This document shows positions 12,491-63,894 of a DNA stretch of 64,000 bases, piece after piece. The translations under genes and the position numbers were made by a program. The notes below the pieces were generated by a model. The model saw only the letters and a list, made by a program, of their open reading frames with translations. It was not told where the DNA came from and searched no databases. The stretch is from assembly GCF_030028105.1 (NCBI RefSeq), contig NC_092374.1:174988057-175052056 (forward strand), in the 5' to 3' direction. The DNA comes from Mobula birostris (taxonomy: Eukaryota). How positions within the stretch are numbered: position 1 is the stretch's first letter; every line of letters starts with the position of its first letter.

Positions 12491-12559
12491 AGTCATGGAA
12501 TTCTCTGCCCCAAGGGTGAGGGAGGCCAGATGACTGGACTTTGATGAAAAACAATGATG

Positions 12560-23141: not shown

Positions 23142-23193
23142 ATGGTGTTGCGTCTACTACTGCTGGCCCTCCTGTGTGGAGGGGTCTCCGCAG
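23142..23193 (+). CDS. MHC class I gene A exon 1, signal peptide MVLRLLLLALLCGGVSA
   Basis: ATG, hydrophobic core, G|GTGAGT phase-1 donor; paralogous to the gene B leader. Confidence 0.85.
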
Positions 23194-24959
23194 GTGAGTG
23201 AAGAGGCAATGGTCAGCGGGACATTCAGCCCCCGGTCAGTAGGTGAGCGGATGGACACAGCGTGATCGTCCCTCGTCAAGATGTCAAGGTCCCACGCCAC
23301 CCAGCCTGAGCACAATGAGTATCAGTGTGGGGGTAGGAGGTTGATGTGGTGGGAGCCCCCCCCCCAGAGACGGCACACGGGAGGGGAAGTAGCGAGGGAA
23401 GTGCGGGGGGGGGATGGGTTAACCTCGGCACCTTCACTGACCTGGGATGGAGATGGGCAGAGGTCTGATTTATAGCACGGTATGGACGAGCCAGTTCAGT
23501 CCTCCGTCCCCATGCTGGAGAACTGCTTCCTCCCGACACGTTCATGACTGCGGTAAAGCTGTGCAGCGGGAATTTCCGCAGCTTGGCCCAAGAGGACAGT
23601 TCGGACTGGGCTGTGCGAAGCAGGTTAAATGTGTTACAGGAGTGTCAGTAAGTGAAGCACCTTGGCATTGTCAAGGCATCTGATCATCAGACGGGTGTAT
23701 GTACTGGCCAACGCTGACCACCGTATCAGAGATAGTGTACTTGTCCAATCCCTCCCTCCTTCCCACCCACTCGTTTTTCTCAGTTTCCCAGTTCTGGACC
23801 TGAAACATTAACTATGGTGCTGGCTCAGCTGTTCAGAAATTCCAGCGTTTTCCGTTTCTGATGTTGGAGGGACAATGTGGGTAAAATGGTGGAACGGAGG
23901 TGCAACTGACCAGAGGGGGTTGTGCATAGATATACAACATCCCTCCTATACCTTTCCCAATCAAGCCCAGCTGAATCCCATCACCCCTACTGGGGCAGGG
24001 GCCGCCGACTGCAGATCGCTAGAATCCTAGCCAGTCTTTCAAGTTGTCCCCAGGTGCAGCCCAGCAGGTGTCTTCTAATCGAAGATCCTTCCTCGTCCAG
24101 AGATGAAATCTTCGGAGTTTCTGTCGCTCTGGGTTTTTACGGAATGAGGCTGCAAGCACCGTGCCTCCTTTCTTTCTCAGCCGGTCCTGGAACCGTCCTT
24201 GCCGGATTTTTCCTACTCAAGTGTCCAATTGCCTCTTAAATGCAATGCTCGGGTTAGTCTGCCCCACATCCTCAAAGTTCAAATGTCAATGTACATTTAT
24301 AATCAAAGTTTGTATACGTTATACTTGCGGTTCGTCTCCTAACAGGCAGCCACGAAAATAAATAAAACCTAAAAGAACCCATCTGAAAAAGACTGTCGAA
24401 CACCCAATGTGCGGAGGGGGGAAAATCCTCGTGCAAACAATAGCTGCAAGCACATAGCATTCTGAAATGAAGTCCGCCAACAGAGCCCCGTAGTTCAGCG
24501 CAGAGCAGAGTCACGGAGCAGCGATATGAACCAGCCCCTCCTTTGCCCCAGGCCCCCTCACCCTGACCTCTTCAACCTACCGGGAGCCAAAATCAAATAT
24601 AGGGTTCAATCGCCTCGATACCGCGCCGCCAAGATTCGGACTGTAACCAATCTTTCCGATTCGGCCCTGTGCTTGTCTCCTTTCAAACAATCGAGTCCAG
24701 TCTCTCCAATCCGCTCTGGTGCCCCGACCGCGCCGCCTCAATTCGGCCGGTAACTGACCTTTGTAATTCGAAAGATCGATCTTCGGGTCTTCCCCGCTCT
24801 CGGTGACGGGCCCAACGCCTCGGTTCTGCCCACATCAGATTGCCTCCGAGTCCAAAGGGAAGTTACAGGCTATTACTTGCCAAAAATATTGTGATTAACA
24901 AAGTATTTAATTGTTTTCCTTGTCTTGTTATCCACCAGCCTGAAGTCGCCAAGTCATCA

Positions 24960-32483: not shown

Positions 32484-33347
32484 GCAATCCCTTCACTAAA
32501 GGCCAAATGTTATCTCACAGAATGGCCTCTCCCTCTTTTCCTGCCCTTCCTATCACTTTCCTCCACCAGTGATCCCACAAATTCCTCCTGTCCCACTGTT
32601 GCCTCTGGTTCTGTCGACTGAGCGACGTCCTGACCATCAATGGAGAATGTGTCGGACAGTTAGATCCTGTCTCTGCTTTGAATGTGGTTTTCCAGAGACA
32701 GCGGCATATGGGACAGAGGTCACCCTCTTGTGGGAGGTGTAATAGCCTCCCCCCGTCTTCGGACACCCTGGCAGTAACCCCAGGAACACCTCTCAGTACC
32801 CAGGAGTCACTGTGGGTCAGAGGTGAAGTGAGAAGCACTCTACAGGAGCTGGAAGAGTGCTGCTACTGGTGGGGAACTTGGTGCAAGTTCTCAGCTGGTC
32901 TCTCCACTGACAGCAGGGAGAAACTAAACCAGGGAGGGAGCACATACAAGTCCTCACCCCGATTGGGAGTTTTCCCTCCTGCACTGAGCACATCCCTATC
33001 CTCCCAGATCCACTTACCCTGACCTCAGAGAGACACACTGATGATTGAACCCAGTCTGGTCTGGGTGAACATGTCTTGTTTCATAACCCCACTCCATCAC
33101 CGGGTTGGGACACCACAGCTCATGGATATAGGCAGCTCAGCCAGGGATCTGCAGATGTGATCAGGGATTTGGACTCTCACTGTCTTCAGGTGCGGCTGAA
33201 ATGCCCCTTGGGGTGAGGGGGCAGTCCTGATTCTCTGGTTTTAGGACTCTGATTCTCTCAGGGGGTTGGGGGTGAAGCCCAGCATCTTGGAGTCAGGGTG
33301 CTGGTTTCAGGTATAAGTTCTTCTCTGACTCTCTGCTCCGGTTCCAG

Positions 33348-33608
33348 GCTCTCACTCTCTCCGTTATTTCTACACGGCGGTGACCCCGGGGTCGGGGGTC
33401 CCTGAGTTCATTACCGTCAGGTATGTGGATGAGGAGCAGATCAGTTACTACGACAGTGTGTTGAGACAGACGGTTCCCCGTCAGCAGTGGATGGCGGAGA
33501 CTCAGGGACCTGACTACTGGGAGTGGGAGACAAGGATCTCTCAGGGCGATGAGCAGTGGGCCCAGGCCAAAATCCAGACCCTCATGAACCGGACCAACCA
33601 GACGAGTG
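33348..33608 (+). CDS. MHC class I gene A alpha1 exon, cassette 1
   Basis: ttccag|GSHSLRYFYTAVTPGSGVPEFITVRYVDEEQISYYDSVLRQTVPRQQWMAETQGPDYWEWETRISQGDEQWAQAKIQTLMNRTNQTS G|GTGAG; 261 nt, phase 1-1. Confidence 0.93.
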
Positions 33609-33799
33609 GTGAGTGGGGAACCATGCTGCGGGGAGGGGTGGCAGAGGGGAACACACAGTTGTGGGGATTAGGTGGGTGATGGCAGGCATGGTGTTGTGGT
33701 TGGGGGGGGCTGATGGTAGAGATGGTGGGGTGGGGAGGGGTATAGAAGGTGACGGTGGGGTTTGTGGGGTGGTGGAGGTGATGGTAGTGATTGGGTGGG

Positions 33800-34770
33800 G
33801 CATGCAATGGACTGAGGTGGGGGTGCTGGCTGTGACATTAGCGATTGTGGGCTGTGAAGTGAGGGATGGTGGGTGTTAGCCGGGGTGACATTAGGGATTG
33901 TGGGGTGGCAGGAGTGACGTTAGGGCACGTGGGAAAGGTGGCAGGGATGGCATTAGGGATTGGGTGGCGGGGGTGTTGGGCGTTGTTGGGTATGGCAGGG
34001 GTGATGTTAGGGATCTTGGGGTTGGAGGGGTGTTGTTGGGAATTGTGGGGGATAGCAGGGGTGACGTTAGGGATCATGGGGGGTGGTAGAGGTGACGTTA
34101 GGGATTGTGGACTGTGAAGTGAGGGATGGTGGGTGTTAGCAGGGTGACATTGGGGATTGTGGGGTGCAGGGGTGATGTTAGGACATGTGGGAGGGATGGC
34201 AGGGATGACATTAGAGATTGTGGTGGCGGAGTGTTGGGGATTGTTGGGGATGGCAGGGGTGATATTAGGGATTATGGGGGTGTACAGGAGTGACATTAGG
34301 GATTGTGGGGTGGTAGTGGTGACGATAGGACATGTGGGAGGGGTGGCAGGAATTACACTGGGGTTTGGGGTGGCAGGGGCGACCTTAGTGATCAAAGGGA
34401 TGTACGGGGTGACGTTAATGATCATAGGGATGTACAGCGGTGATGCTAGTGATCATGGGGGTGTACAGGGGTGACGTTATTGATCATGGAAGTGTACAGG
34501 GGTAACCTTAGTGATCAGAGGGATGTACAGGGTGACGTTAGTGATCATAGAGTGTGCAGGGGTGACGTTATTGATCATGGGCATGTACAGGGGTGACGTT
34601 CGGGAACATGGGGATGTACAGGGGCGATGTTAGGGAACATGGGAGTGTACAGGGGTGATGTTAGGGAACATGGGAATGTACGGGGTGACGTTAGGGAACA
34701 TGGGAATGTACAGGGGTGATGTTAGTGATCATGGGGGTGTACAGGGGTGACGTTAGTGATCATGGGGGTG
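33800..34770 (+). repeat. G-rich 31-bp minisatellite in the alpha1-alpha2 intron (cassette 1)
   Basis: Unit approximately atgggggtgtacaggggtgacgttagtgatc, grading into diverged G-rich variants. Confidence 0.85.
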
Positions 34771-35535
34771 TGCAGGGGGCTGCGGGAGGGATGGTGGGGG
34801 TGTCGTCAGTGATCTTGCAAGGGGTGGCAGGGGTGATGTTAGGGATTGTGGGGCTGGCAGGGGTGACAGTGGAGATTGTGTGGGGGTGACAGTTGATGGT
34901 AAGTTTTGAGCGGGGGTGGGGGTGAGAGTAGGGGCAGTGTGGGGGTAGGATGTTGACAATAAAGAATGTTTGAGTGAGGGGGTGATGATAGGGAATGTGC
35001 AGGGGTGTGGGAGGTGATGGGGGAGAGTGCGGGTGTGAGGGGGGAGGGAGTGACATTAGGGACCGTATGGGGTGGGGTGTGTTGGGAATTGTAGGGCTGG
35101 TGGGGATGACATAAGGATTTGTGGTGGTGGGATGGCAGGGATTGTGTAGGGTGACAGTGGGGATTTTGGAGATGGTTGTGATGGTAGGTTTTGTCTTGGG
35201 ACTGAAGGTGGGGATCATACAGGGTAGGGTGATGGTAGAGACGGGGCAGGAGTCAGATGCAGTGGTGGGGAGAGAGAGTGACGGTAGGGTGTGGGTGGGG
35301 ACCGTGTTGGAGGTGAGGGGTGACATGGAAGGTGATGGTAGGGATGGGTCAACGGTGGGTTGCGGTGAAGAAGTGACGGTGGGGTCTGTGCAGCGGTGAC
35401 AGTAGGGACTGTGAAGGCTGGGGGAACGTGTGGGTGAATATTGGTTCTGCCTGGGGGAGCGGAAGTAAAAGCCACATCTGCAGGATGGAAAGTTGTCCAC
35501 AGCCCCACAACTCGCCAATGGATGATGTGTTCCAG

Positions 35536-35808
35536 GGATCCACTTTCTCCAGAGGATGTCCGGCTGTGAGCTCCGTGATGACGGGACCTCCACCGGGTTC
35601 CTGCAGTACGGCTGGGACGGGTCAGACTTCATCACCTTCGACAAGGACCGGATGGTGTGGGTGACCCCTGTGCCCTGGGGTGTCATCACCAAGGACAAGT
35701 GGGATCGGGACACGGCCATGAACCAGGGTTGGAAGGGATACCTGGAGCAGACCTGCATCGAATGGCTGACGAAATACGTCAAGGCTGGGGGTAGTCACCT
35801 GAAACCCA
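35536..35808 (+). CDS. MHC class I gene A alpha2 exon, cassette 1
   Basis: GIHFLQRMSGCELRDDGTSTGFLQYGWDGSDFITFDKDRMVWVTPVPWGVITKDKWDRDTAMNQGWKGYLEQTCIEWLTKYVKAGGSHLKP; 273 nt, AG/GT flanked. Confidence 0.95.
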
Positions 35809-36007
35809 GTGAGTGCATGGGGTGGGGTCAATGTGTGTGCCAGGGAGTGGAAGTCAGTGTCTGCAACCCCCATCTCCACCCTCCCCTGCCCACCCCTTCC
35901 CACCTTCACTGCCCCCGTCACCTCCTCTGCAACACCCCCCACGCAGTCTCCTCTTCCCATCACCTTCCTACCTCCACTCAATGCTTCCTCTTTCTCTCCC
36001 ACCCCAG

Positions 36008-36271
36008 ATCCCCCCGAAGTCTCGTTCACCGCCTCCGAGGACGGCCGCCACCTCTCCTGTGTGGCCACTGGATTCTACCCTCAGTCCATCGACATGACTA
36101 TTCTGCGGGACGGCCGGATCCTGGAGGAGACCCATTCCCACGGGATCCTCCCCAATCACGACAACACCTACCAGCTGACCAGGACGGTGCGGGTGGAGCC
36201 CACGGACACAATAAAGTTCTCCTGTCGGGTGGAACACCGGAGTCTCTCCGAGCCCCTCGTCCTGTTCCTCG
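36008..36271 (+). CDS. MHC class I gene A alpha3 (C1-set Ig) exon, cassette 1
   Basis: PPEVSFTASEDGRHLSCVATGFYPQSIDMTILRDG..ILPNHDNTYQL..FSCRVEHRSLSEPLVLFL G|GTAAG; 264 nt. Confidence 0.95.
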
Positions 36272-37278
36272 GTAAGAAACACCACTGGTTGTGCGGTACA
36301 TGGGCGTCCAGTGTCGCCCATCTTCACCCCACCATTCCCCACCACGTTTCCTTCTCGCATTATAACAGTATCCGTGTTGTCTCGGCCTCTCTCTGTAGGG
36401 TCATGGAGAAGAACTGTATAGTACAGTATTGGCCCTTTGGCCCACAAAGTTGTGCCGACCTCTTAACCCACTCCACGGTCAATCTAACACATCCCTCTCA
36501 CAAATTGTCCATTTTTCTTTCATCCATGTGCCTAACTAAGAGTCTCTGATCTGTCCTTAATGTGTCAGTCTCCATCACGACCACAGCAGTGTTCTATGCT
36601 CTCCTCTGACATCGCCCCGACACTTTCTGCAATCACCTTAAAAAGATGTTCTTTGGTATTAGGCGTTGCTTCTTGGTTAAGGCAAAAGCTGGTTGTCCAC
36701 ATTATCTGTGCCTCTTATCGTCTCATAGACTAACTGTCACTTTGTGCTCTACTTTCCCCCAGTGCAAGAGTCAGCGGGTCAGACTGTATGGAATTAGTTC
36801 CTTCGGCCTGACCTCAGTTCTCAGCTGGTCTCTCCGCTGACAGCAGGGAGAAACTTAACCAGGGAGGGAGCACAGACGAGTCCTCACCCCGTTTGGGAGT
36901 TTTCCCACCTGCTCTGAGCACATCCCTATCCTCACAGAGCCACTTACCCTGACCTCAGAGAGACACACTGATGATTGAACCCAGTCTGGTCTGGGTGAAC
37001 ATGTCTTGTTTCATAACCCCGCTCCATCACCAGGTTGGGACACCACAGCTCATGGATATAGGCAGCTCAGCCAGGGATCTGCAGATGTGACCAGGGATTT
37101 GGACTCTCACTGTCTTCAGGTGCGGTTCAAATGCCCCTTGGGGTGAGCGGTCAGTCCTGATTCTCTGGTTTTAGGACTCTGATTCTCTCAGGGGGTTGGG
37201 GATGAAGCCCAGCATCTTGGGTCTCAGGGTCCTGGTTTCAGGTATAAGTTATTCTCTGACTCTCAGATCCAGTTTCAG

Positions 37279-37539
37279 GCACTCACTCTCTCCGTTATTT
37301 CTACACGGCGGTGACCCCGGGGTCGGGGGTCCCTGAGTTCATTACCGTCAGGTATGTGGATGAGTTGTTGATCAGTTACTACGACAGTGTGTTGAGACGG
37401 ACGGTTCCCCGTCAGCAGTGGATGGCGGAGACTCAGGGACCTGACTACTGGGAACGGGAGACAAGGATCTCTCAGGGTTATGAGCAGTGGGCCCAGGCCG
37501 AAATCCAGACCCTCATGAACCGGACCAACCAGACGCGTG
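37279..37539 (+). CDS. MHC class I gene A alpha1 exon, cassette 2
   Basis: tttcag|GTHSLRYF...VDELLISYYDSVLRRTV...YWERETRISQGYEQWAQAEIQTLMNRTNQTR G|GTGAG; 261 nt, open. Confidence 0.92.
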
Positions 37540-37769
37540 GTGAGTGGGGAAACATGTTGGGGGGAGGGGTGGCAGAGGGGAACACACAGTTGTGGGGATT
37601 AGGTGGGTGATGGCAGGCATGGTGTTGTGGTTGGGGGGGGCTGATGGTAGAGATGGTGGGGTGGGGAGGGGTGTGGACGGTGACGGTGGGGTTTGTGGGG
37701 TGGTGGAGGTGATAGTAGTGATTGGGTGGGGCATGCAATGGACTGAGGTAGGGGTGCTGGCTGTGACAT

Positions 37770-38500
37770 TAGCGATTGTGGGCTGTGAAGTGAGGGATGG
37801 TGGGTGTTAGCCGGGGTGACATTAGGGATTGTGGGGTGGCAGGAGTGACGTTAGGGCACGTGGGAAAGGTGGCAGGGATGGCATTAGGGATTGGGTGGCG
37901 GGGGTGTTGTTGGGCGTTGTTGGGTATGGCAGGGGTGATGTTAGGGATCTTGGGGTTGGAGGGGTGTTGTTGGGAATTGTGGGGTATAGCAGGGGTGACG
38001 TTAGGGATCATGGGGGGGTGGTAGAGGCGACATTAGGGATTGTGGGGTGCAGGGGTGATGTTAGGGTATGTGGGAGGGATGGCAGGTAGACATTCGAAAT
38101 TGTGGTGACGGGGTGTTGGGGATTGTTGGGGATGGTAGGGGAGAGGTTAGGGATCATGGGGATGTACGGGGTGACGTTAGGGATCTTGGGGATGTACAGG
38201 GGTGATGTTAGGGATCATGGGGGTGTACAGAAGTGACATTAATGATCATGGGGGTGTACAGGGGTGAAGTTAGGTATCATGGGGGTGTACAGGGGTGAAG
38301 TTAGGGATCATGGGGATGTACAGAGGTGACGTTAGTGATCATGGGGGTGTACAGGAGTGACATTAATGATCATGGGGGTGTACAGAGGTGAAGTTAGTGA
38401 TCATGGGGATGTACAGGGGTGAAGTTAGTAATCATGGGGGTGTACAGGGGTGAAGTTAGTGATCATGGGGTTGTACAGGGGTGACGTTAGTGATCATGGG
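37770..38500 (+). repeat. G-rich 31-bp minisatellite (cassette 2)
   Basis: Period 31 checked at 38341, 38372 and 38403. Confidence 0.85.
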
Positions 38501-39274
38501 GGTGTGCAGGGGGCTGCGGGAGGGATGGTGTGGGTGTCGTCAGTGATTTTGCAAGGGGTGGCAGGGGTGATGTTAGGGATTGTGGGGCTGGCGGGGGTGA
38601 CAATGGTGATTGTGTGGGGGTGATGGTTGATGGTAGGTTTTGAGCGGGGTGGGGGTGAGAATAGGGGCAGTGTGGGGGTAGGATGTTGACAAAGAATGTT
38701 TGGGTGAGGGGGTGATGATAGGGAATGTGCAGGGGTGTGGGAGGTGATGGGGGAGAGTGTGGGTGTGAGGGGGGAGGGAGTGACATTAGGGACCGTATGG
38801 GGTGGGGTGTGTTGGGAATTGTAGGGCTGGTCGGGGTGACGTAAGGATTTGTGGTGGTGGGATGGCAGGGATTGTGTGGGGTGACAGTGGGGATTTTGGA
38901 GATGGATGTGATGGTGGGTTTTGTCTGGGGGCTGAAGGTGGGGATCATACGGGTGGGGAGGGGTGGGGTGATGGTAGAGACGGGGCAGGAGTCAGATGCA
39001 GTGGTGGGGAGAGAGAGTGACGGTAGGGTGTGGGTGGGGACCGTGTTGGAGGTGAGGGGTGACATGGAAGGTGATGGTAGGGATGGGTCAACGGTGGGTT
39101 GCGGTGAAGAAGTGACGGTGGGGTCTGTGCAGCGGTGACAGTAGGGACTGTGAAGGCTGGGGGAACGTGTGGGGGAATATTGGTTCTGCCTGGGGGAGCG
39201 GAAGTAAAAGCCACATCTGCAGGATGGAAAGTTGTCCACAACCCCACAACTCGCCAATGGATGATGTGTTCCAG

Positions 39275-39547
39275 GGATCCACTTTCTCCAGAGGATGTCC
39301 GGCTGTGAGCTCCGTGATGACGGGACCTCCACCGGGTTCCTGCAGTACGGCTGGGACGGGTCAGACTTCATCACCTTCGACAAGGACCGGATGGTGTGGG
39401 TGACCCCTGTGCCCTGGGGTGTCATCACCAAGGACAAGTGGGATCGGGACACGGCCATGAACCAGGGTTGGAAGGGATACCTGGAGCAGACCTGCATCAA
39501 ATGGCTGACGAAATACGTCAAGGCTGGGGGTAGTCACCTGAAACCCA
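39275..39547 (+). CDS. MHC class I gene A alpha2 exon, cassette 2
   Basis: As cassette 1 except TCIKWL in place of TCIEWL; splice sites intact. Confidence 0.93.
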
Positions 39548-39746
39548 GTGAGTGCATGGGGTGGGGTCAATGTGTGTGCCAGGGAGTGGAAGTCAGTGTC
39601 TGCAACCCCCATCTCCACCCTCCCCTGCCCACCCCTTCCCACCTTCACTGCCCCCGTCACCTCCTCTGCAACACCCCCCACGCAGTCTCCTCTTCCCATC
39701 CCCTTCCTACCTCCACTCAATGCTTCCTCTTTCTCTCCCACCCCAG

Positions 39747-40010
39747 ATCCCCCCGAAGTCTCGTTCACCGCCTCCGAGGACGGCCGCCACCTCTCCTGTG
39801 TGGCCACTGGATTCTACCCTCAGTCCATCGACATGACTATTCTGCGGGACGGCCGGATCCTGGAGGAGACCCATTCCCATGGGATCCTCCCCAACCAGGA
39901 CAACACCTACCAGCTGACCAGGACGGTGCGGGTGGAGCCCACGGACACAACAATGTTCTCCTGTCGGGTGGAACACCGGAGTCTCTCCGAGCCCCTCGTC
40001 CTGTTCCTCG
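39747..40010 (+). CDS. MHC class I gene A alpha3 exon, cassette 2
   Basis: PPEVSF..LSCVATGFYP..ILPNQDNTYQL..TTMFSCRVEHRSLSEPLVLFL; splice sites intact. Confidence 0.93.
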
Positions 40011-41017
40011 GTAAGAAACACCACTGGTTGTGCGGTACATGGGCGTCCAGTGTCGCCCATCTTCACCCCACCATTCCCCACCACGTTTCCTTCTCGCATT
40101 ATAACAGTATCCGTGTTGTCTCGGCCTCTCTCTGTAGGGTCATGGAGAAGAACTGTATAGTACAGTATTGGCCCTTTGGCCCACAAAGTTGTGCCGACCT
40201 CTTAACCCACTCCACGGTCAATCTAACACATCCCTCTCACAAATTGTCCATTTTTCTTTCATCTATGTGCCTAACTAAGAGTCTCTGATCTGTCCTTAAT
40301 GTGTCAGTCTCCATCACGACCACAGCAGTGTTCTATGCTCTCCTCTGACATCGCCCCGACACTTTCTGCAATCACCTTAAAAAGATGTTCTTTGGTATTA
40401 GGCGTTGCTTCTTGGTTAAGGCAAAAGCTGGTTGTCCACATTATCTGTGCCTCTTATCGTCTCATAGACTAACTGTCACTTTATGCTCTACTTTCCCCCA
40501 GTGCAAGAGTCAGCGGGTCAGACTGTATGGAATTAGTTCCTTCGGCCTGACCTCAGTTCTCAGCTGGTCTCTCCACTGACAGCAGGGAGAAACTTAACCA
40601 GGGAGGGAGCACAGACGAGTCCTCACCCCGATTGGGAGTTTTCCCACCTGCTCTGAGCACATCCCTATCCTCACAGAGCTACTTACCCTGACCTCAGAGA
40701 GACACACTGATGATTGAACCCAGTCTGGTCTGGGTGAACATGTCTTGTTTCATAACCCCGCTCCATCACCAGGTTGGGACACCACAGCTCATGGATATAG
40801 GCAGCTCAGCCAGGGATCTGCAGATGTGACCAGGGATTTGGACTCTCACTGTCTTCAGGTGCAGTTCAAATGCCCCTTGGGGTGAGCGGTCAGTCCTGAT
40901 TCTCTGGTTTTAGGACTCTGATTCTCTCAGGGGGTTGGGGATGAAGCCCAGCATCTTGGGTCTCAGGGTCCTGGTTTCAGGTATAAGTTATTCTCTGACT
41001 CTCAGATCCAGTTTCAG

Positions 41018-41278
41018 GCACTCACTCTCTCCGTTATTTCTACACGGCGGTGACCCCGGGGTCGGGGGTCCCTGAATTCATTACCGTCAGGTATGTGGAT
41101 GAGTTGTTGATCAGTTACTACGACAGTGTGTTGAGACGGACGGTTCCCCGTCAGCAGTGGATGGCGGAGACTCAGGGACCTGACTACTGGGAACGGGAGA
41201 CAAGGTTCTCTCAGGGTTATGAGCAGTGGGCCCAGGCCGAAATCCAGACCCTCATGAACCGGACCAACCAGACGAGTG
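41018..41278 (+). CDS. MHC class I gene A alpha1 exon, cassette 3
   Basis: GTHSLRYF...YWERETRFSQGYEQWAQAEIQTLMNRTNQTS G|GTGAG; 261 nt, open. Confidence 0.92.
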
Positions 41279-41499
41279 GTGAGTGGGGAAACATGTTGGG
41301 GGGAGGGGTGGCAGAGGGAACACACAGGTGTGGGGATTAGGTGGGTGATGGCAGGCATGGTGTTGTGGTTGGGGGGGGCTGATGGTAGAGATGGTGGGGT
41401 GGGGAGGGGTGTGGACGGTGACGGTGGGGTTTGTGGGGTGGTGGAGGTGATGGTAGTGATTGGGTGGGGCATGCAATGGACTGAGGTGGGGGTGCTGGC

Positions 41500-42240
41500 T
41501 GTGACATTAGCGATTGTGGGCTGTGAAGTGAGGGATGGTGGGTGTTAGCCGGGGTGACATTAGGGATTGTGGGGTGGCAGGAGTGACGTTAGGGCACGTG
41601 GGAAAGGTGGCAGGGATGGCATTAGGGATTGGGTGGCGGGGGTGTTGTTGGGCGTTGTTGGGTATGGCAGGGGTGATGTTAGGGATCTTGGGGTTGGAGG
41701 GGTGTTGTTGGGAATTGTGGGGTATAGCAGGGGTGACGTTAGGGATCATGGGGGGGTGGTAGAGGCGACATTAGGGATTGTGGGGTGCAGGGGTGATGTT
41801 AGGGTATGTGGGAGGGATGGCAGGTAGACATTCGAAATTGTGGTGACGGGGTGTTGGGGATTGTTGGGGATGGTAGGGGAGACGTTAGGGATCATGGGGG
41901 TGTACAGGGGTGACGTTAGTGATCTTGGGGATGTACAGGGGTGACATTAGTGATCATGGGGGTGTACAGGGGTGACGTTAGGGATCTTGGGGATGTACAG
42001 GGGTGATGTTAGGGATCATGGGGGTGTACAGGAGTGACATTAATGATCATGGGGGTGTACAGGGGTGAAGTTAGGGATCATGGGGATGTACAGGGGTGAC
42101 ATTAGTGATCATGGGGGTGTACAGGGGTGAAGTTAGTGATCATGGGGATGTACAGGGGTGACGTTAGTAATCATGGGGGTGTACAGGGGTGAAGTTAGTG
42201 ATCATGGGGTTGTACAGGGGTGACGTTAGTGATCATGGGG
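41500..42240 (+). repeat. G-rich 31-bp minisatellite (cassette 3)
   Basis: Same unit as in cassettes 1 and 2. Confidence 0.85.
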
Positions 42241-43014
42241 GTGTGCAGGGGGCTGCGGGAGGGATGGTGGGGGTGTCGTCAGTGATTTTGCAAGGGGTGG
42301 CAGGGGTGATGTTAGGGATTGTGGGGCTGGCGGGGGTGACAATGGTGATTGTGTGGGGGTGATGGTTGATGGTAGGTTTTGAGCGGGGGTGGGGGTGAGA
42401 ATAGGGGCAGTGTGGGGGTAGGATGTTGACAAAGAATGTTTGGGTGAGGGGGTGATGATAGGGAATGTGCAGGGGTGTGGGAGGTGATGGGGGAGAGTGT
42501 GGGTGTGAGGGGGGAGGGAGTGACATTAGGGACCGTATGGGGTGGGGTGTGTTGGGAATTGTAGGGCTGGTCGGGGTGACGTAAGGATTTGTGGTGGTGG
42601 GATGGCAGGGATTGTGTGGGGTGACAGTGGGGATTTTGGAGATGGATGTGATGGTGGGTTTTGTCTGGGGGCTGAAGGTGGGGATCATACGGGTGGGGAG
42701 GGGTGGGGTGATGGTAGAGACGGGGCAGGAGTCAGATGCAGTGGTGGGGAGAGAGAGTGACGGTAGGGTGTGGGTGGGGACCGTGTTGGAGGTGAGGGGT
42801 GACATGGAAGGTGATGGTAGGGATGGGTCAACGGTGGGTTGCGGTGAAGAAGTGACGGTGGGGTCTGTGCAGCGGTGACAGTAGGGACTGTGAAGGCTGG
42901 GGGGACGTGTGGGTGAATATTGGTTCTGCCTGGGGGAGCGGAAGTAAAAGCCACATCTGCAGGATGGAAAGTTGTCCACAACCCCACAACTCGCCAATGG
43001 ATGATGTGTTCCAG

Positions 43015-43287
43015 GGATCCACTTTCTCCAGAGGATGTCCGGCTGTGAGCTCCGTGATGACGGGACCTCCACCGGGTTCCTGCAGTACGGCTGGGACGGG
43101 TCAGACTTCATCACCTTCGACAAGGACCGGATGGTGTGGGTGACCCCTGTGCCCTGGGGTGTCATCACCAAGGACAAGTGGGATCGGGACACGGCCATGA
43201 ACCAGGGTTGGAAGGGATACCTGGAGCAGACCTGCATCGAATGGCTGACGAAATACGTCAAGGCTGGGGGTAGTCACCTGAAACCCA
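43015..43287 (+). CDS. MHC class I gene A alpha2 exon, cassette 3
   Basis: Protein identical to cassette 1 alpha2; AG/GT intact. Confidence 0.93.
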
Positions 43288-43509
43288 GTGAGTGCATGGG
43301 GTGGGGTCAATGTGTGTGCCAGGGAGTGGAAGTCAGTGTCTGCAACCCCCCTCTCCACCCTCCCCTGCCCACCCCTTGCCGCCTCCTCTGCCCACCCCTT
43401 CCCACCTTCACTGCCCCCGTCACCTCCTCTGCAACACCCCCCACGCAGTCTCCTCTTCCCATCCCCTTCCTACCTCCACTCAATGCTTCCTCTTTCTCTC
43501 CCACCCCAG

Positions 43510-43767
43510 ATCCCCCCGAAGTCTCGTTCACCGCCTCCGAGGACGGCCGCCACCTCTCCTGTGTGGCCACTGGATTCTACCCTCAGTCCATCGACATGAC
43601 TATTCTGCGGGACGGCCGGATCCTGGAGGAGACCCATTCCCATGGGATCCTCCCCAACCAGGACAACACCTACCAGCTGACCAGGACGGTGCGGGTGGAG
43701 CCCACGGACACAACAATGTTCTCCTGTCGGGTGGAACACCGGAGTCTCTTCCTCGTCCTGTTCCTCG
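43510..43767 (+). CDS. MHC class I gene A alpha3 exon, cassette 3 (in-frame 6-nt deletion near the end)
   Basis: ...FSCRVEHRSLFLVLFL G|GTAAG; 258 nt versus 264. Confidence 0.92.
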
Positions 43768-44880
43768 GTAAGAAATACCACTGGTTGTGCGGTACATGGG
43801 CGTCCAGTGTCGCCCATCTTCACCCCACCATTCCCCACCACGTTTCCTTCTCCCATTATAACAGTATCCGTGTTGTCTTGGCCTCTCTCTGTAGGGTCAT
43901 GGAGCAGAACTGTATAGTACAGTACTGGCACTCTGGCCCACAAAGTTGTTCCGACCTCTTAACCCACTCCACGGTCAATCTAACACATCCCTCTCGCAAA
44001 TTGTCCATTTTTCTTTCATCCATGTGCCTAACTAAGAGTCTCTGATCTGTCCTTAATGTGTCAGTCTCCATCACGACCACAGCAGTGTTCTATGCTCTCC
44101 TCTGACATCGCCCCGACACTTTCTGCAATCACCTTAAAAAGATGTTCTTTGGTATTAGGCGTTGCTTCTTGGTTAAGGCAAAAGCTGGTTGTCCACATTA
44201 TCTGTGCCTCTTATCGTCTCGTAGACTAACTGACACTTTGTGCTCTACTTTCCCCCAGTGCAAGAGTCAGCGGGTCAGACTGTATGGAATTAGTTCCTTC
44301 GGCCTGACCTCTCATTAATGATCACATATTTGCATATCTGATCCCATTTCCTTGCCATCTCTATCTTGGTTATTCATATACCTGTCTAGATCTATCCTCA
44401 GTGATATGAGAGTCTGCCTTCTCCACTTCTTCAGTGTGTTTGATTCCAGCCACTCCCTGGGTTTGGGTGAAACATTCCTTCCTCCGGTCACTCCCAGTGA
44501 TCTTGCTCCTCACTGACCGATTCTGATCTTGGACTCCTCTGCTCCGGGAAATCAGTTCCTCCTACCTGCCCCACCTGAGCCTCTCATTACCGTGTGCATC
44601 CATACCTGGTGAACCTGACCAGGGTCAGGGTCAGTATTAGGGTAAATGGTCACTCCAAACCTCCCACTGACCACTCTGTCACACACCAGCTTTGTTCTGT
44701 CTCATGGCCTTACAATGAGTTCGGGCACCTGGTGATCCTGTTGGATGTGTCTCCTTTCACAGCTTGTACCTTGAGTTCTGTTTGATTGGGATTCAGAGCT
44801 CACTGGGCAGGAGATGAATCTATCTGGTTATAAGCTGGGGATGTGGGACCATTCTCATTGACTGTCTCTGTGTTTTACAG

Positions 44881-44910
44881 CCGGGGACAATGGCTACAAT
44901 CCAACTAAAA
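44881..44910 (+). CDS. MHC class I gene A cytoplasmic exon (AGDNGYNPTK)
   Basis: gtgttttacag|...A|GTATGT; 30 nt, phase 1-1. The GYNP motif is typical of fish class I tails. Confidence 0.75.
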
Positions 44911-45178
44911 GTATGTTCACTGTAAATCACAGCTGGATGGTTGTGTGACATTGTTCATGTTCACTGGGTCTCATCAACAGAACAGGGGTTCTGTGCGTGT
45001 GTGTGTCTCTGTGTCTGTGTGTACAACACCTTTGTGCATGTCTCTGTCGGTGTGTGTGATTATCCGTATATACCTGTGTTTGTGCAGTGGTGTATTGTAT
45101 GCATGTGGCTGTCTTTGTTTCTCCGTGTCTGCACTGCATTGGTAGTAAATACTTTCCTGCCTGTCCTTCCATTCACAG

Positions 45179-45225
45179 CTTCTGACAAAGGAGAATCCTT
45201 CTCCAACTCCTCTGCCATGGCCTGA
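45179..45225 (+). CDS. MHC class I gene A last coding exon (TSDKGESFSNSSAMA*)
   Basis: ccattcacag| acceptor, serine-rich SD..S.SNSSA tail, TGA followed by a G|GTAGG donor. Confidence 0.78.
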
Positions 45226-45798
45226 GGTAGGAACCGTGTTGGGCTCTGGTCAATGCTGGGCTTCCCAGCTCTTGTCACTGGAGCTGGAGCTGGTCATTAC
45301 AGCACAGTCTGGGCACTGAGAAACCCTGGTCCGGAACCAGAGCTGTGGGATGGGCTGTAACCAGTCCCCACAGCACCTCACCATAGGAATGGCCTCCTGC
45401 TCTGTTCCATTCCAGGGATCCAGTGCCCAGTTTTCCTGAAGTTTGTCACTGGAAATGCTGTTTCTTCCCAGGGTTGCCCCCCACTGGTGTTTTGTGGCCA
45501 GGGGTGTGCTCAGGTGTTGTAGGGAGAAGTCGGGGGTGTGGAGGGTGGGTTGTTGTGGGGGGCTTATGGTGCTGGGGAAGATGGGTTTTTTATGGGTGTG
45601 GTGTGGTGCAGGATGGGTTCCGTGTCTAGATTATATTGCAGTAGTTGTTGGGAACTGGGAATCGCTGGATATTATTCCCAGTGATGGGTGGGGCATTTCG
45701 GTGGGTTTTATTGTCAGTGTTGGGGAGCTTTGTTGTTGATGTCTCTGTGGGTTTGCCTCACTCTATAACTATCTCTCCTCATCTCTCTCCCTCTGCAG

Positions 45799-46323
45799 AA
45801 AATTCAATTCACAGCAAGATGTTGATGAAGAGATCAAGGGGAACAGAGTGTAATCCTGGGGCTTCGGATGATTAACGAGTTAACCTTTGATTTGGGCATT
45901 GACCCTCATGTTTGGGAATACTGATAATTTGCTGATTCACTGCAGGAGCCAGACTATAATGCTGCTTTTCATAGAAAGCTGAATCACTTTAATGTGTTTG
46001 GGATGAAGTGAAGGGGTTTAGTGCGGAACAGCTCTGACCCACAGCTCAGTCCTGGTCAGCATCTGGAGACTCACAGCTGGGTGAATAGATTTGCTCATTC
46101 AGTCAATTTGACTGTTGACCTAGAGTGGTTCTGTCCCCTGTGGGATGGGAGGGGAGTGGGTGGCAGGTCCTGGAGTTAAGGTGTCACCTTGACCCATGGG
46201 CTGTGGGGGTGATCACAGGGAGATCTGGAAATGTGACTTTTATGCCGGGGGAGTGGGAGGTAGGATGGGAAGTGTTTGTTTGTGCTTTACTGTCAAGGCT
46301 CTTTAATACTGAATCCAAATAAA
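45799..46323 (+). other. Probable 3' UTR exon of gene A ending at a polyadenylation signal
   Basis: Polypyrimidine acceptor ctctccctctgcag ending at 45798; AATAAA at 46318-46323. Confidence 0.45.
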
Positions 46324-47289
46324 GTCGACATGTACCCCATCTCCCTGACTGCAAAAGATTGTGGTGTTGGGAACATTGGGATTTGAAGGATGCAGCCACC
46401 AGGTCTCTGGACAAAATGGGAGTGATGTGTGGCAGGGATTTAAGGAGGTGCTGGCTGATACTTAGCCCAGCTCCATGCTGCCTAAAAGTGAGGGAGGGGC
46501 TGCCTTTGTGGGAGAGTGGGTGAGAAAACACAAGGAGTGGTTGCTGCTGGGGCAACAGTGACCAGGCAGAGAGCTGACAAAGACCATGTTTATGTTACCT
46601 TATGTGAGGATGGAAGTCAAGGAATTGTTTAATTGCACCATTTGAATCAAGTTTAATATCACTGGCATATGTTGTGAGATTTGTTGCTTGGTGGCGAAGT
46701 GTCGAGAGTCTGCTGGCTACCTCACAGTCCTACAGCATGGAAATGCGTTCTTCGGTGGACTGTGTCCATGCTGACCATCAATGACCCATCTATGTTATTC
46801 CCACTCACAGACACTTCGTCCACAACCTTCTCTGCCTTGCTGTCTCAAATGCTTGTCTGGGTATTTCTTAAACATTGTGAGATTCTCTCCCTCCACCACC
46901 CCATCAGGGGGTGTGTCCCACATTCCAACCACCCCCCCCCCCACTGCCTGTGTGAAAGTTCTTCCCCATATCCCCTCTTCACCGTTGCCCGAACCCCATC
47001 TCTCTAGTTTCAGACACATTTGCCATGGGGAAGGTTTCACATATGGACGACCCTGTCTCTGCCTGTGATAATTTTGTACGTCTATCAGGGTCTCCCCTCA
47101 GCATCCTCCACTCCAAAGGGGCTATCAATTCTCTCCTTTACAGCCACACTGCTCCACCCCAGACAACATTTTTGTGAACTTCTGCACCCTGTCTAGTGCA
47201 ATCATGTCATTTTCGCCTCCCTGGAGACCACAGATACTGATTTCTGACAATCCTCTTGTGCAGGGTTCATTACTGAGACTGGGGCTGTT

Positions 47290-48100
47290 CCAGTTTGCTC
47301 ACATAGCAGATTTCCTTGAATTTAAAATCCCTGAAGTTAAAATCAGGATGCTTATTACTGACTACAGCTCATCATTCAATACCATCATCCCCTCAAAACT
47401 AATCAATAAGCTTCAAGACCTTGGTCTCAATATCTCCTTGTGCATTTAGATCCTCGATTTCCTCACTTGCAGACCCCAGTCACTTTGAATTGGCAACAAC
47501 ATCTCCTCCACAATCTCCATCCGCACAGGTGCTCCACAAGGATGTGTCCTTAGCCCCCAGCTGTACTCGCTTTACACGTATGACTGTCTGGCTAAGCACA
47601 GCTCCAATACCATATTCAAGTTTGCTGATGACACCACTGCTGTAGGCCGAATTAAAGGTGGTGACGAATCATCATATAGGCAGGAGATTGAAAATCTGGA
47701 TGAGTGGTGCCACACGCTGTGTCAGCAAGATCAAGGAGCTGATTATCGACTTCAGGAGAAGGAAACCAGAGGTCCATTAGCCAGCCTTCATCGGAGGATC
47801 AGAGGTGGAAAGGCTGAACAACATTAAACTCCCCTATGTTATTATTTTGGAGGACCTGTCCTGGGCCCAACACTGAAGTCCAACTGCAAAGAAAGTACAG
47901 AGACACCTCTACGAAGATTCAGCATGACCTCTAAGACTTTGACAAACCTCTATAACTGTGTAGTGGGGGGTATATTGACTGGCTGCATCACAGCCTGATA
48001 TGAGTATACCAATGCCCTTGAGTGGAAAATGCTACAACAAGTAGTGGATATGGCCCAGTCCATCACAGGTGGACTCAGTCCCCACCACTGAGCACATCTG
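47290..48100 (+). mobile_element. Rex1/Babar LINE RT fragment
   Basis: VKIRMLITDYSSSFNTIIPSKLINKLQDLGL; [11 protein letters not shown]; KFADDT. Confidence 0.8.
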
Positions 48101-49399
48101 GACTGAATGCAGCCAAACAGGGCTGAGGAATGACCGGCACTTGCAGCATATTCGGGCAGCAGTGAGAGATGGACCGCCTCACCCTGAATCCAGGGCATTC
48201 CAGCAGCCTGATCCCAAACACCAACATCACTTACTCTGGTTGACATCTGGTCAGGCCCGGTAGTTCTTGTCCTCAGCTTGACTATTCTCCCACTGGAGTA
48301 CAGCTACTGAGGCAGGTTGGAGGGATTACTCCCTACCACACAAAAGGCTATTCAGCTCATCAGAGCCATGCCAGCTCCTTATAATCATTTTGTTCCTTCT
48401 TGATTCAGCAGTAGACATTTGCGTATATATTCACAACCAAAAAAGACACTGAACATGTGTTAAACCACAATACATCACTTTATTGAAGTTCTATAAAACA
48501 CAAAATACAGAAAGAAAAACAAATGGTTAATAAAGTAGCAGTTCGGGATACAAACTAATACCTACCATCCATAAATGAGCTGATTGGCAGAACGCTGACA
48601 AGCATTCATGCAGTTCCCACTCCTTCATGACCCTCACCCTATCCCTCCCCTTCCCCCTCTCCCTTAACTTTCTCAAAATGCTGCAAGCTAACACCACTTT
48701 GTCTTACACATTTCAATTTGATTTTAGAGCATAGGAGGGAGGAGTCACGTTCTGGAGAAGCCCCTGTTACCTTGGAAGTCTAGGGTTGTGGAAAGGGCAT
48801 GGCTCTCAAAGAGTGGGTGATCCCTGCACAGTGAGATTCCATGGGGGGGGGCATTGGGCAGTCCTGGCGTGGGAGTGATGACCATATGTCTCTGGGACAC
48901 CCTGCCCACAGGATCCATCTGACAGAAAGCAGTAATTTAAAGCTGAGCTCTGGGCCAGCTTCCTCTGACAGAGGGTGGTGAATCACTAGAGGCCTCAGCC
49001 CCAGAGTAGTGGGGGCTGGATCATTAGAGATGGTTCAGGTCGAGTTAGAGAAATATTTGCACAGTCGAGGGTCTGAAAGCCATGGGAACTGGCCCAGAGG
49101 AGTTGAGGCCAGTGGCAGAATGGACACAATGGAGCACCCTTTAAATTCCTGGTCGTGAACATAACCTTGGGGGAAATAGTGCACCAGAAAACAAAAGAGC
49201 TGACTGTTGACTTCAGGAAGGGGAAAGAGAACAAACTTGTGCTAGTCTGCTTGGGGAAACACTGGTGGGGAGAGTCAGCAGGTAAAATCCCTTCTTCAGG
49301 CTCCTTGCTACCTCAACACCACCTGTCCCTCCACCTGTCTGTATTGTCTGTAAATTTGGCCACAATGCCAACAGTTCTGTCAGTGGTCCCCTTGCACAC

Positions 49400-62671: not shown

Positions 62672-62812
62672 GTGAGTGGGACACCAGGTGGGGGCAGAGT
62701 GGGTGTGGAGATGTGTCAGGTGGCGGATGAGCGAGGGAGGAACAGCACTTGTGGGAAAAGGGGACGGTTCCCACCCCACTCTCAGCCCACACTGATGGAC
62801 GGTGTGTTCCAG

Positions 62813-63786: not shown

Positions 63787-63894
63787 TTCTGAAGTCCAGC
63801 TATATACCTCTCATGGTCATTGCCGTGCTCGTGGTCCTGGTGATCCTGGTCGTCTTCGCTGACGTTGTGAGTTATCCCTTCTACAAGAAGAAAG
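63787..63894 (+). CDS. MHC class I gene B transmembrane exon
   Basis: VLKSSYIPLMVIAVLVVLVILVVFADVVSYPFYKKK G|GTAGG; 108 nt, phase 1-1. The cytoplasmic exons lie beyond the window. Confidence 0.88.

What the first reader, a model, noticed from the sequence alone, without database searches (positions are those of the whole stretch)
43768..45225. Gene A has cytoplasmic-tail exons but no intact transmembrane exon: possible secreted class I
Seen: gene B has a 108-nt TM exon 262 nt after alpha3. No hydrophobic, splice-flanked equivalent is visible between gene A's last alpha3 (43767) and its tail exon (44881), or within any duplicated unit. Direct alpha3-to-tail splicing stays in frame (..VLFL-AGDNGYNPTKTSDKGESFSNSSAMA*). 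Established: soluble class I-type molecules exist (ZAG/AZGP1, mouse Q10, TM-skipped HLA isoforms). Inference: the product may be a secreted, multivalent class I, or this may be a decaying gene.
Basis: partly seen in the sequence, partly recalled or inferred. Interest (0 to 1): 0.78.

Follow-up and report, generated by a model that had tools for sequence, protein, structure and literature searches.

The report
Anchor-less three-headed MHC class I gene
A manta ray MHC class I gene has let its membrane-anchor exon decay, yet it is still transcribed and keeps three intact peptide-binding units in one reading frame, so it probably makes a secreted, multi-headed version of a molecule that normally sits on the cell surface.

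Summary
Gene A (Mobula birostris; RefSeq "uncharacterized protein", XP_072115023-27) has no usable transmembrane (TM) exon between its last alpha3 exon (ends 43767) and its tail exons.

- **TM exon.** It matches gene B's TM exon (score 39.5; random windows 22.0 +/- 2.9, 0 of 600 as high). Its acceptor is lost, and all three frames carry stops.
- **RNA.** One contig joins the cassette-3 end of alpha3 to the last coding exon (43767>45179), then to the 3'UTR exon (45226>45799). All five RefSeq isoforms end the same way.
- **Product.** Signal peptide, up to three alpha1-alpha2-alpha3 cassettes with all peptide-end-binding residues kept, a hydrophilic 15-residue tail and no anchor.
- **Relatives.** Anchor-less tandem models exist in M. 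hypostoma (3 cassettes) and Hypanus sabinus (2). Pristis pectinata has 3 cassettes, and its intact TM exon is inverted.

Secretion and function are inferred, not shown. The finding is a new variant of the known soluble class I kind (mouse Q10, HLA-G5, iguana Amcr-UA). I found no paper describing it. The scan also noted the triple cassette separately (s1-145051).

The parts
23142..23195 (+). Gene A leader (signal peptide) exon, MVLRLLLLALLCGGVSAG
   Evidence: tblastn with P0037 is 100% identical. ATG and GT donor read.
33348..36271 (+). Cassette 1: alpha1 33348-33608, alpha2 35536-35808, alpha3 36008-36271
   Evidence: Open frame; AG/GT sites present.
37279..40010 (+). Cassette 2: alpha1 37279-37539 (alternative acceptor at 37267 gives the linker DPVSG), alpha2 39275-39547, alpha3 39747-40010
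41018..43767 (+). Cassette 3: alpha1 41018-41278 (alternative acceptor at 41006), alpha2 43015-43287, alpha3 43510-43767. Its alpha3 has a 6-nt deletion near the 3' end (RSLFLVLFL instead of RSLSEPLVLFL).
   Evidence: Very high RNA depth on alpha2 and alpha3, and a GT..AG joint at 43287>43510.
43768..45178 (+). Stretch removed as one intron in the RNA contig (joint 43767>45179)
   Evidence: table 5: joint listed as 43766>45178, GT..AG (cut +1), in X1 at depth 1567.5.
43768..44311 (+). 3' end of the 3.74-kb duplicated unit. It matches 36272-36815 and 40011-40554 at 97.6-98.0%. The unit boundary is at 44311/44312.
   Evidence: A contig of organism B's DNA and the fitting part of one of its RNA contigs both end exactly at 44311 (table 8, records 11 and 28).
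43833..44230 (.). High-copy interspersed repeat inside the intron
   Evidence: In the DNA run X13, depth is 15,590 and 4,207 in these two bins, against about 20-60 in the flanks (table 2).
44686..44740 (+). Relic of the TM exon (statistically supported core). Acceptor AG changed to TG, indels, stops in all three frames, not hydrophobic.
   Evidence: Local alignment to gene B's TM exon scores 39.5. Shuffled queries give 22.2 +/- 3.2 (0 of 300). Random windows give 22.0 +/- 2.9, maximum 29.5 (0 of 600). Identity is 77% over 52 columns. The minus strand is not significant. The 3' half is not alignable.
44881..44910 (+). Cyt1-like micro-exon (A)GDNGYNPTK(T). Its splice sites look intact, but it is skipped in the RNA contig and in all five RefSeq isoforms.
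45179..45226 (+). Last coding exon (Cyt2): (A)SDKGESFSNSSAMA, stop TGA at 45223-45225
45799..46340 (+). 3'UTR exon. AATAAA at 46318.
   Evidence: Joint listed as 45224>45797, GT..AG (cut +2), in the same X1 contig. High RNA depth over 45823-46220. Poly(A) signal found.
63787..63894 (+). Gene B's intact 108-nt TM exon (comparison)
   Evidence: P0004 residues 283-318 match at 100%. Kyte-Doolittle score 3.41.

Best explanation
Gene A is an expressed MHC class I gene of Mobula birostris. Its TM exon has decayed into an unspliceable pseudo-exon, so the splicing machinery joins the last alpha3 exon straight to the last coding exon.

The resulting open frame has these parts:
- a normal signal peptide;
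- up to three classical-type alpha1-alpha2-alpha3 cassettes in tandem, linked by about 13 residues (EPLVLFL-DPVSG);
- a 15-residue hydrophilic tail, which is the former cytoplasmic end.

It has no membrane anchor. The protein should therefore enter the ER, and each cassette should fold like an ordinary class I heavy chain with beta2-microglobulin and peptide. The whole should then leave the cell as a soluble molecule with up to three peptide grooves.

Shown: absence and decay of the TM exon, the TM-less in-frame mRNA, intact cassettes, and counterparts in other rays.

Inferred: translation, beta2-microglobulin and peptide loading, secretion, and any role such as a soluble multivalent ligand for CD8/TCR or NK-type receptors.
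For: **No anchor.**
- There is no hydrophobic segment in the intron and no TM homology at protein level.
- A significant TM relic sits at 44686-44740 with a lost acceptor, stops and a frameshift.
- In the 836-aa product, only the signal peptide passes a hydropathy threshold.

**RNA.**
- Runs X1-X3 cover exons at depths of 10^4 to 10^5 and the introns at or near zero, so they are RNA.
- One 238-nt X1 contig (depth 1567.5) joins 43767>45179 and 45226>45799, both GT..AG. It starts at 43720. That is about where 31-letter words become specific to cassette 3's 6-nt deletion.
- The stop lies 1-4 nt before the last exon junction, as in normal family members. Nonsense-mediated decay is therefore not expected (inference).

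**Annotation.** RefSeq isoforms X1-X5 (836, 745, 745, 745 and 654 aa) all end ...VLFLASDKGESFSNSSAMA.

**Intact cassettes.**
- All nine exons are open with AG/GT sites.
- Y7, Y59, R84, N86, K146, W147, Y159, Y171 and the four cysteines are kept in all three cassettes. T143 is also kept (ITKDKW, read from the alignment).
- Pfam finds 3x MHC_I and 3x C1-set.
- The closest solved structure is nurse shark class I 6LUP, E = 7e-97.

**Other species.**
- M. hypostoma LOC134346730 has 3 cassettes and no TM. Hypanus sabinus LOC132394446 has 2 cassettes and no TM.
- Mobula and Hypanus cassettes share the derived motifs EQWAQA and GIHFLQR, and their downstream cassettes share RYVD(E/D)LLISYYDS. They form one clade on alpha1-alpha2 (support 83/93).
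- Pristis pectinata LOC127585898 has 3 intact cassettes, and its TM exon is inverted in place.
Against: - No protein evidence exists for translation or secretion.
- The alpha3>Cyt2 joint rests on one contig in one RNA run. RefSeq may have used the same RNA, so the two are not independent.
- I did not test the inter-cassette alpha3>alpha1 junctions with reads. The number of cassettes per mRNA is therefore known only from gene models, which also show exon-skipped forms.
- dN/dS among the cassettes is uninformative (0.6-1.2 on 5-19 differences).
- alpha3 is homogenised with paralogues (dS 0.10-0.13 against 0.57-0.73 in alpha1). Gene conversion, rather than selection, could be keeping the cassettes intact.
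- The cassettes are 97-99% alike, so the current array is young.
Confidence: 0.62

Rival explanations
1. Gene A is a transcribed but functionless gene on its way to becoming a pseudogene. Loss of the TM exon was the first lesion. The cassettes look intact only because the tandem array is young and is repaired by gene conversion from working class I neighbours.
For: - The TM exon is clearly dead.
- The cassettes are 97-99% identical.
- alpha3 dS against gene B is only 0.10-0.13, which indicates exchange with paralogues.
- dN/dS among cassettes is near 1 on very few changes.
- Cassette 3 carries a 6-nt deletion at the end of alpha3.
Against: - The same anchor-less tandem layout is present in M. 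hypostoma and Hypanus sabinus, with shared derived motifs and a common clade. An analogous gene exists in Pristis.
- There is no stop or frameshift in any of the 11 cassettes examined, while the roughly 110-nt TM relic collected several disabling lesions.
- All peptide-end-binding residues are kept.
- The gene-specific RNA contig is abundant (depth 1567.5).
Confidence: 0.2
2. The protein is made but not released. It stays in the ER or peptide-loading complex, for example as a peptide sink or regulator, or it is held at the surface through another protein.
For: Nothing here is direct. The cassettes keep the features needed to engage the loading machinery. The former cytoplasmic tail is retained and conserved across species (ASDKGES(F/S)SNSSA(M/L)A in Mobula and Hypanus, ATDKGESSSSSSATA in Pristis), which hints that the tail still matters.
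Against: There is no C-terminal hydrophobic stretch of the kind a GPI signal needs, no KDEL-type ending, and no second hydrophobic segment. Known TM-less class I molecules such as mouse Q10 are secreted (PMC2483932, discussion).
Confidence: 0.12
3. A working TM exon exists but was missed, either elsewhere in the gene or in an alternative isoform. The molecule would then be a normal membrane class I with extra domains.
For: Only the 78 joints that one search left unlisted. Also, a low-depth contig (X1 record 3, 1057 nt) from a related copy covers part of the intron with about 6% differences.
Against: - Six-frame hydropathy and homology searches find nothing from 43768 to 45178 apart from TG-microsatellite translations.
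- Mature RNA depth in the intron is zero in X2 and X3 for most bins.
- None of five RefSeq isoforms, nor the models of three other species, has a TM.
- The relic's acceptor is gone.
Confidence: 0.03

Closest known systems
Mouse H2-Q10 (secreted liver class Ib)
   Same: It is a class I gene made soluble by a lesion in the TM exon (a 13-bp deletion, frameshift and early stop). It is secreted and still binds a classical-like peptide repertoire (as reviewed in PMC2483932; see also the rat counterpart in PMC2188359).
   Different: Q10 keeps and translates part of its damaged TM exon and has a single alpha1-alpha2-alpha3 unit. Gene A skips the dead exon entirely, keeps the last cytoplasmic exon as its C-terminus, and strings up to three units in one chain.
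Soluble HLA isoforms (HLA-G5/G6; exon-5-skipped HLA-A/B/C)
   Same: These are TM-less class I molecules produced at the RNA level, and they are released from cells (PMC2483932, discussion).
   Different: In humans the TM exon is intact and skipping or intron retention is optional. Here the exon is dead, so the soluble form is obligatory. The human forms also have one groove each.
Marine iguana Amcr-UA
   Same: It is a non-mammalian class I gene whose cDNA and genomic sequence lack the TM and cytoplasmic parts, and it is proposed to be secreted (PMC2483932, abstract).
   Different: It has a single cassette, is non-classical and conserved, and has no tail. Gene A keeps classical-type groove residues and a tail exon and is tandemly multiplied.
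Ray and shark classical class I (UAA-type; nurse shark structure 6LUP; M. birostris XP_072115033, here P0002)
   Same: Each cassette is about 60% identical to 6LUP (E = 7e-97). The cassettes are 64-85% identical, exon by exon, to a TM-bearing M. birostris class I. Exon phases, signal peptide and tail exons are the same.
   Different: Gene A has no TM, three cassettes instead of one, and skips Cyt1.
ZAG/AZGP1
   Same: It is a soluble protein with the class I fold (established knowledge).
   Different: ZAG is an old, separate lineage without beta2-microglobulin or peptide binding. Gene A is a close relative of peptide-presenting genes, so ZAG is a weak analogy.

Membership tests
MHC class I heavy chain (peptide-presenting, classical-type) | alpha1-alpha2 platform domain plus a C1-set alpha3 domain | tested here: met
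   Pfam MHC_I in 3 stretches (E = 1.7e-145) and C1-set in 3 stretches (E = 6.5e-41) in P0306. 6LUP match at E = 7e-97.
MHC class I heavy chain (peptide-presenting, classical-type) | Residues that hold the peptide ends (Y7, Y59, Y159, Y171, T143, K146, W147, R/Y84), the two disulphides and the N86 glycan site | tested here: met
   All are present in all three cassettes. T143 was read from ITKDKW. The roles of Y7, Y59, Y159, Y171 and W147 follow PMC8236899. Hypanus has H at position 7.
MHC class I heavy chain (peptide-presenting, classical-type) | Type I membrane anchor (TM exon plus cytoplasmic tail) | tested here: not met
   No TM. Only a relic remains. The mRNA skips it.
MHC class I heavy chain (peptide-presenting, classical-type) | High polymorphism, broad expression, association with beta2-microglobulin and peptide | not testable with these tools
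   No population data, tissue labels or protein data were available.
Soluble (secreted) class I molecules, Q10 / HLA-G5 type | Signal peptide present, no TM, no GPI-type hydrophobic C-terminus in the translated product | tested here: met
   Hydropathy of P0306 and the other isoforms flags only residues 1-19. The C-terminus ASDKGESFSNSSAMA is hydrophilic.
Soluble (secreted) class I molecules, Q10 / HLA-G5 type | TM-less mRNA actually made | tested here: met
   X1 contig with joints 43767>45179 and 45226>45799. This is one contig in one run.
Soluble (secreted) class I molecules, Q10 / HLA-G5 type | Protein found outside cells | not testable with these tools
   Needs proteomics or an expression experiment.

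The most novel reading that the evidence does not exclude
Rays carry a previously undescribed class of obligatorily secreted, polyvalent peptide-presenting class I molecules, with two or three grooves on one chain.

This class has been maintained since before manta rays and stingrays split. It arose a second time in sawfish by a different lesion: inversion of the TM exon rather than its decay.

Such molecules would act as natural soluble "MHC multimers" that engage T-cell or NK-type receptors at a distance.
Probability: 0.3. Interest if true: 0.88.

Novelty: new variant of a known kind. Interest (0 to 1): 0.72.

Why it matters
Soluble class I molecules are known, but their roles remain unclear and each known example carries one groove. 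This one is genomically hard-wired, expressed and classical-looking, it strings two or three grooves on one secreted chain, and it recurs in several ray lineages. That would be a natural counterpart of the MHC multimers that immunologists build to bind T cells with high avidity.

The hypothesis is testable. Multivalent soluble peptide-MHC might be used physiologically for tolerance, for decoying receptors, or in maternal-embryo or mucosal settings. All four of these rays are live-bearers, which I note from general knowledge.

The locus also gives a clean example of two different structural routes to the same product, exon decay and exon inversion. Finally, it warns that "uncharacterized protein" multi-cassette class I models in automated annotations may be real genes rather than fusion artefacts.

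Tried and rejected
**Searches that came back blank or blocked**
Two isoforms were not on record. I therefore could not test whether the same TM lesions are shared across Myliobatiformes.
- A search for protein fragments spanning the alpha3>alpha1 linker (P0306:497-620) found no candidates. This says nothing either way.
- Eight literature searches and look-ups in four papers found no description of TM-less or tandem-cassette class I in cartilaginous fish. The library is incomplete.

**Analyses that gave nothing usable**
- The 3' half of the TM exon and its donor region are not significantly alignable in gene A (score 15 against a null of 16.8). I claim only 44686-44740 as relic.
- The Pristis TM exon alone does not align significantly to gene A (19 of 300 shuffles as high).
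- A tblastn "TM" hit at 45029-45124 is a translated TG microsatellite and was rejected.
- The hydrophobic window at 44818-44874 lies in the acceptor's pyrimidine tract and is out of frame, so it was rejected.
- dN/dS among cassettes rests on too few changes to use.

**Limits of the reads and the tree**
- Read laying saw contigs only, so it gives no expression ranking and no strand. The stretch excluded alpha1, so inter-cassette joints were not tested.
- The full-cassette tree does not resolve Mobula plus Hypanus. Only the alpha1-alpha2 tree does, and only moderately.

**Assembly artefact considered and rejected.** The independent M. hypostoma model also has three cassettes. A contig of organism B's DNA and the fitting part of one of its RNA contigs both end exactly at the unit boundary 44311.

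**Process note.** I redid this from coordinates.

Full report
**What the window is**

Gene B's leader, alpha3 and TM exons match M. birostris protein P0004 at 96-100%. Gene A matches XP_072115027 and its sister isoforms exon by exon at 99-100%. The window is therefore giant manta ray MHC class I DNA.

**Anatomy of gene A**

- The leader exon is at 23142-23195.
- Three tandem units of about 3.74 kb follow, with boundaries at about 32886, 36816, 40555 and 44311.
- Each unit carries an alpha1, alpha2 and alpha3 exon with normal AG/GT sites and phase 1.
- The leader is not part of the unit. The three cassettes therefore share one promoter and one 3' end, as the scan also noted separately (s1-145051).
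- After the third alpha3 (43510-43767) come four features:
  - a 1,113-nt intron;
  - a 30-nt Cyt1-like exon (44881-44910);
  - the last coding exon, Cyt2 (45179-45226, stop at 45223-45225);
  - a 3'UTR exon from 45799, with AATAAA at 46318.

**Checking the observation**

The intron is 262 nt and the TM exon is 108 nt at 63787-63894.
- In gene A's intron, no six-frame window reaches a TM-like hydropathy. The best is 1.96, out of frame and inside the acceptor's pyrimidine tract. Gene B's TM scores 3.41.
- Relaxed tblastn with eight ray class I proteins finds alpha1, alpha2, alpha3, Cyt1 and Cyt2 but no TM on either strand.
- The inter-cassette spacers have none either.
- The absence of a usable TM exon is therefore real.

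**What happened to the TM exon**

- A nucleotide comparison shows that part of it is still there. Gene B's TM exon aligns locally to 44686-44740 with a score of 39.5.
  - Shuffled queries give 22.2 +/- 3.2, and none of 300 reaches the observed score.
  - Random windows of the same size from elsewhere in the 64 kb give 22.0 +/- 2.9, with a maximum of 29.5, and none of 600 reaches it.
  - Identity is 77% over 52 aligned columns. The minus strand gives nothing.
- In a three-way alignment with gene B and the sawfish exon, three changes stand out:
  - the acceptor AG reads TG;
  - there are indels;
  - every frame has stops.
- The 3' half and the donor are no longer recognisable.
- The intron is also swollen by a high-copy repeat at about 43833-44230, where DNA depth is roughly 4,000-16,000 against about 20-60 in the flanks.
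- The exon therefore decayed in place. It was not deleted by the duplication, whose boundary at 44311 lies upstream of the relic.

**RNA**

- Three small runs (X1 and X2 from organism A, X3 from organism B) cover alpha2, alpha3, Cyt2 and the 3'UTR exon at depths of 10^3 to 10^5 and leave the introns at or near zero. A DNA run (X13) covers everything evenly. The three small runs are therefore RNA (table 2).
- In X1, a 238-nt contig (depth 1567.5) consists of three pieces joined by GT..AG joints at 43767>45179 and 45226>45799 (tables 5 and 8):
  - 47 nt of the alpha3 end;
  - the Cyt2 exon;
  - 144 nt of the UTR exon.
- The contig starts at 43720. That is about where 31-letter words begin to include cassette 3's private 6-nt deletion, which ties it to gene A's last cassette rather than to a paralogue. 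Paralogue ends appear separately as loose ends (table 7).
- The mature mRNA therefore lacks both a TM exon and Cyt1. The frame is kept (G|CT = Ala), giving ...CRVEHRSLFLVLFL-ASDKGESFSNSSAMA*.
- Limits: this is one contig in one run, contigs cannot rank expression, and 78 further joints were not listed.

**Annotation**

RefSeq models five isoforms of 836, 745, 745, 745 and 654 aa. They differ by skipped cassette exons, but all carry the same TM-less end. Hydropathy flags only the signal peptide. Pfam sees three MHC_I and three C1-set domains.

**Is it alive?**

- All nine ectodomain exons are open.
- Every cassette keeps the residues that bind the peptide ends, the N86 glycan site and both disulphides (roles per PMC8236899).
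- The nearest solved structure is nurse shark class I 6LUP (E = 7e-97).
- dN/dS among cassettes is uninformative because there are too few changes. Against gene B it is 0.44-0.48.
- alpha3 is nearly homogenised with gene B (dS 0.10-0.13, against 0.57-0.73 in alpha1). Exchange among paralogues therefore blurs any dating.

**Other species**

- *Protein searches.* They recover M. hypostoma LOC134346730 (838 aa, three cassettes, linker DPVPG, tail ASDKGESSSNSSAMA). They also recover Hypanus sabinus LOC132394446 (573 and 563 aa, two cassettes, tail ASDKGESSSNSSALA). In the longest Hypanus isoform, a Cyt1-like exon serves as the inter-cassette linker. None of these models has a TM.
- *Shared features of Mobula and Hypanus.* Their cassettes share motifs that are absent from TM-bearing ray class I: EQWAQA and GIHFLQR in every cassette, and RYVD(E/D)LLISYYDS in the downstream cassettes. 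They form one clade on alpha1-alpha2 with support 83/93. The full-length tree leaves them unresolved. This points to one anchor-less tandem gene older than the manta-stingray split, with later homogenisation.
- *Sawfish (Pristis pectinata).* I could read the locus of LOC127585898 as L001. It has one leader, three intact cassettes, Cyt1 and Cyt2.
  - Its TM exon is intact, with its own AG and GT, but it lies on the opposite strand.
  - A segment of about 335 bp (L001 37547-37881) is inverted relative to the neighbouring classical gene (L002), while the flanks are collinear.
  - Its cassettes group with the sawfish classical gene (support 99-100).
- *What this implies.* Either the layout arose twice by different lesions, or an old gene has been overwritten by local gene conversion. 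In either case, anchor loss and cassette multiplication go together in three ray families.

**How it most likely works**

- With a signal peptide and no anchor, GPI-type end or retention motif, the default fate is secretion.
- Each cassette has what it needs to pair with beta2-microglobulin and hold a peptide.
- About 13 residues link one alpha3 to the next alpha1, which should allow a beads-on-a-string arrangement (inference).
- A soluble chain with two or three loaded grooves would bind CD8/TCR or NK-type receptors with more avidity than a monomer.
- Soluble human class I is reported to trigger death of activated CD8 cells (cited in PMC2483932), so a dampening or decoy role is the most economical guess.
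- None of this is shown.

**Comparison with known systems and novelty**

- Lesion-driven soluble class I is known. Examples are mouse Q10, which has a 13-bp deletion in its TM exon, the iguana gene Amcr-UA, and the splice forms of HLA-G (PMC2483932, PMC2188359).
- Three things are new here: the obligatory skipping of a dead exon with retention of the last tail exon, the tandem multiplication of complete classical-type cassettes in the same chain, and the recurrence across rays.
- I found no paper describing this. The gene models sit in RefSeq as "uncharacterized protein".
- I rate it a new variant of a known kind, with interest 0.72.

**Confidence**

| Claim | Probability |
|---|---|
| Gene A makes TM-less, in-frame mRNA | about 0.9 |
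| The product is a secreted, functional multi-groove class I | about 0.6 |
| Transcribed pseudogene | about 0.2 |
| Product made but retained in the cell | about 0.12 |
| A TM exon was missed | about 0.03 |

Noticed in passing
L001:37547-37881 (Pristis pectinata LOC127585898); compare L002:13605-13940: The sawfish three-cassette class I gene has an intact TM exon (own AG and GT, hydrophobic ORF) lying inverted in a roughly 335-bp segment. The flanks are collinear with the neighbouring classical gene. This is a different structural route to an anchor-less product.
   Followed up: partly
Proteins P0040/P0201/P0202 (Salvelinus namaycush LOC120027542), P0204 (Archocentrus), P0045, P0206 (Clarias), P0207 (Podarcis muralis): Automated annotations of teleosts and a lizard also contain class I models with 2-3 complete cassettes. 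Several have no TM and repeat the same hydrophilic spacer after each cassette. The lizard model has two cassettes plus a TM. Tandem-cassette class I may be more widespread than rays. I did not check whether these are real genes or fusion artefacts.
   Followed up: partly
window 37267-37278 and 41006-41017 (versus 33336-33347): Cassettes 2 and 3 carry a new upstream acceptor (tctcAG) 12 nt before the usual alpha1 acceptor. RefSeq uses it to give the linker DPVSG. Cassette 1, which follows the leader, lacks it. M. hypostoma has the matching linker DPVPG.
   Followed up: partly
window 43741 region (cassette 3 alpha3) versus 36245 and 39984: The third alpha3 has a private 6-nt deletion plus one substitution, turning RSLSEPLVLFL into RSLFLVLFL. 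M. hypostoma's third cassette does not have it.
   Followed up: partly
window gene A exons versus gene B exons (62411-63524): Synonymous divergence between genes A and B is 0.57-0.73 in alpha1, 0.27 in alpha2 and only 0.10-0.13 in alpha3. This suggests sequence exchange that homogenises alpha3 among paralogues.
   Followed up: partly
window 34363-34808, 38044-38622, 41721-42392: A 31-bp minisatellite array sits in the alpha1-alpha2 intron of each cassette, and a 60-bp array lies just upstream of it (33963-34341, 37837-38223, 41575-41815).
   Followed up: no
window 44883-45208: All three RNA runs hold a low-depth contig that starts at Cyt1 and reads through the Cyt1-Cyt2 intron with 12-18 differences from the window. 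It is probably unspliced RNA from a closely related second copy or allele. A 1057-nt X1 contig resembling 44337-44881, with 32 differences, lacks 43866-44140 and 44168-44336.
   Followed up: no
window 46619-46817 and 47216-48210: These are very high-copy interspersed repeats (DNA depth 25,000-140,000 in run X13) downstream of gene A. 47333-47912 has a 74-80% copy at 52327-52900.
   Followed up: no
Protein P0305 (Hypanus sabinus LOC132394446 isoform X1): In the stingray, a Cyt1-like exon (AGNKGYNPTK) lies between cassette 1's alpha3 and cassette 2's alpha1 and is used as the linker. The stingray repeat unit therefore includes Cyt1, unlike the manta unit, which ends 544 nt after alpha3.
   Followed up: no
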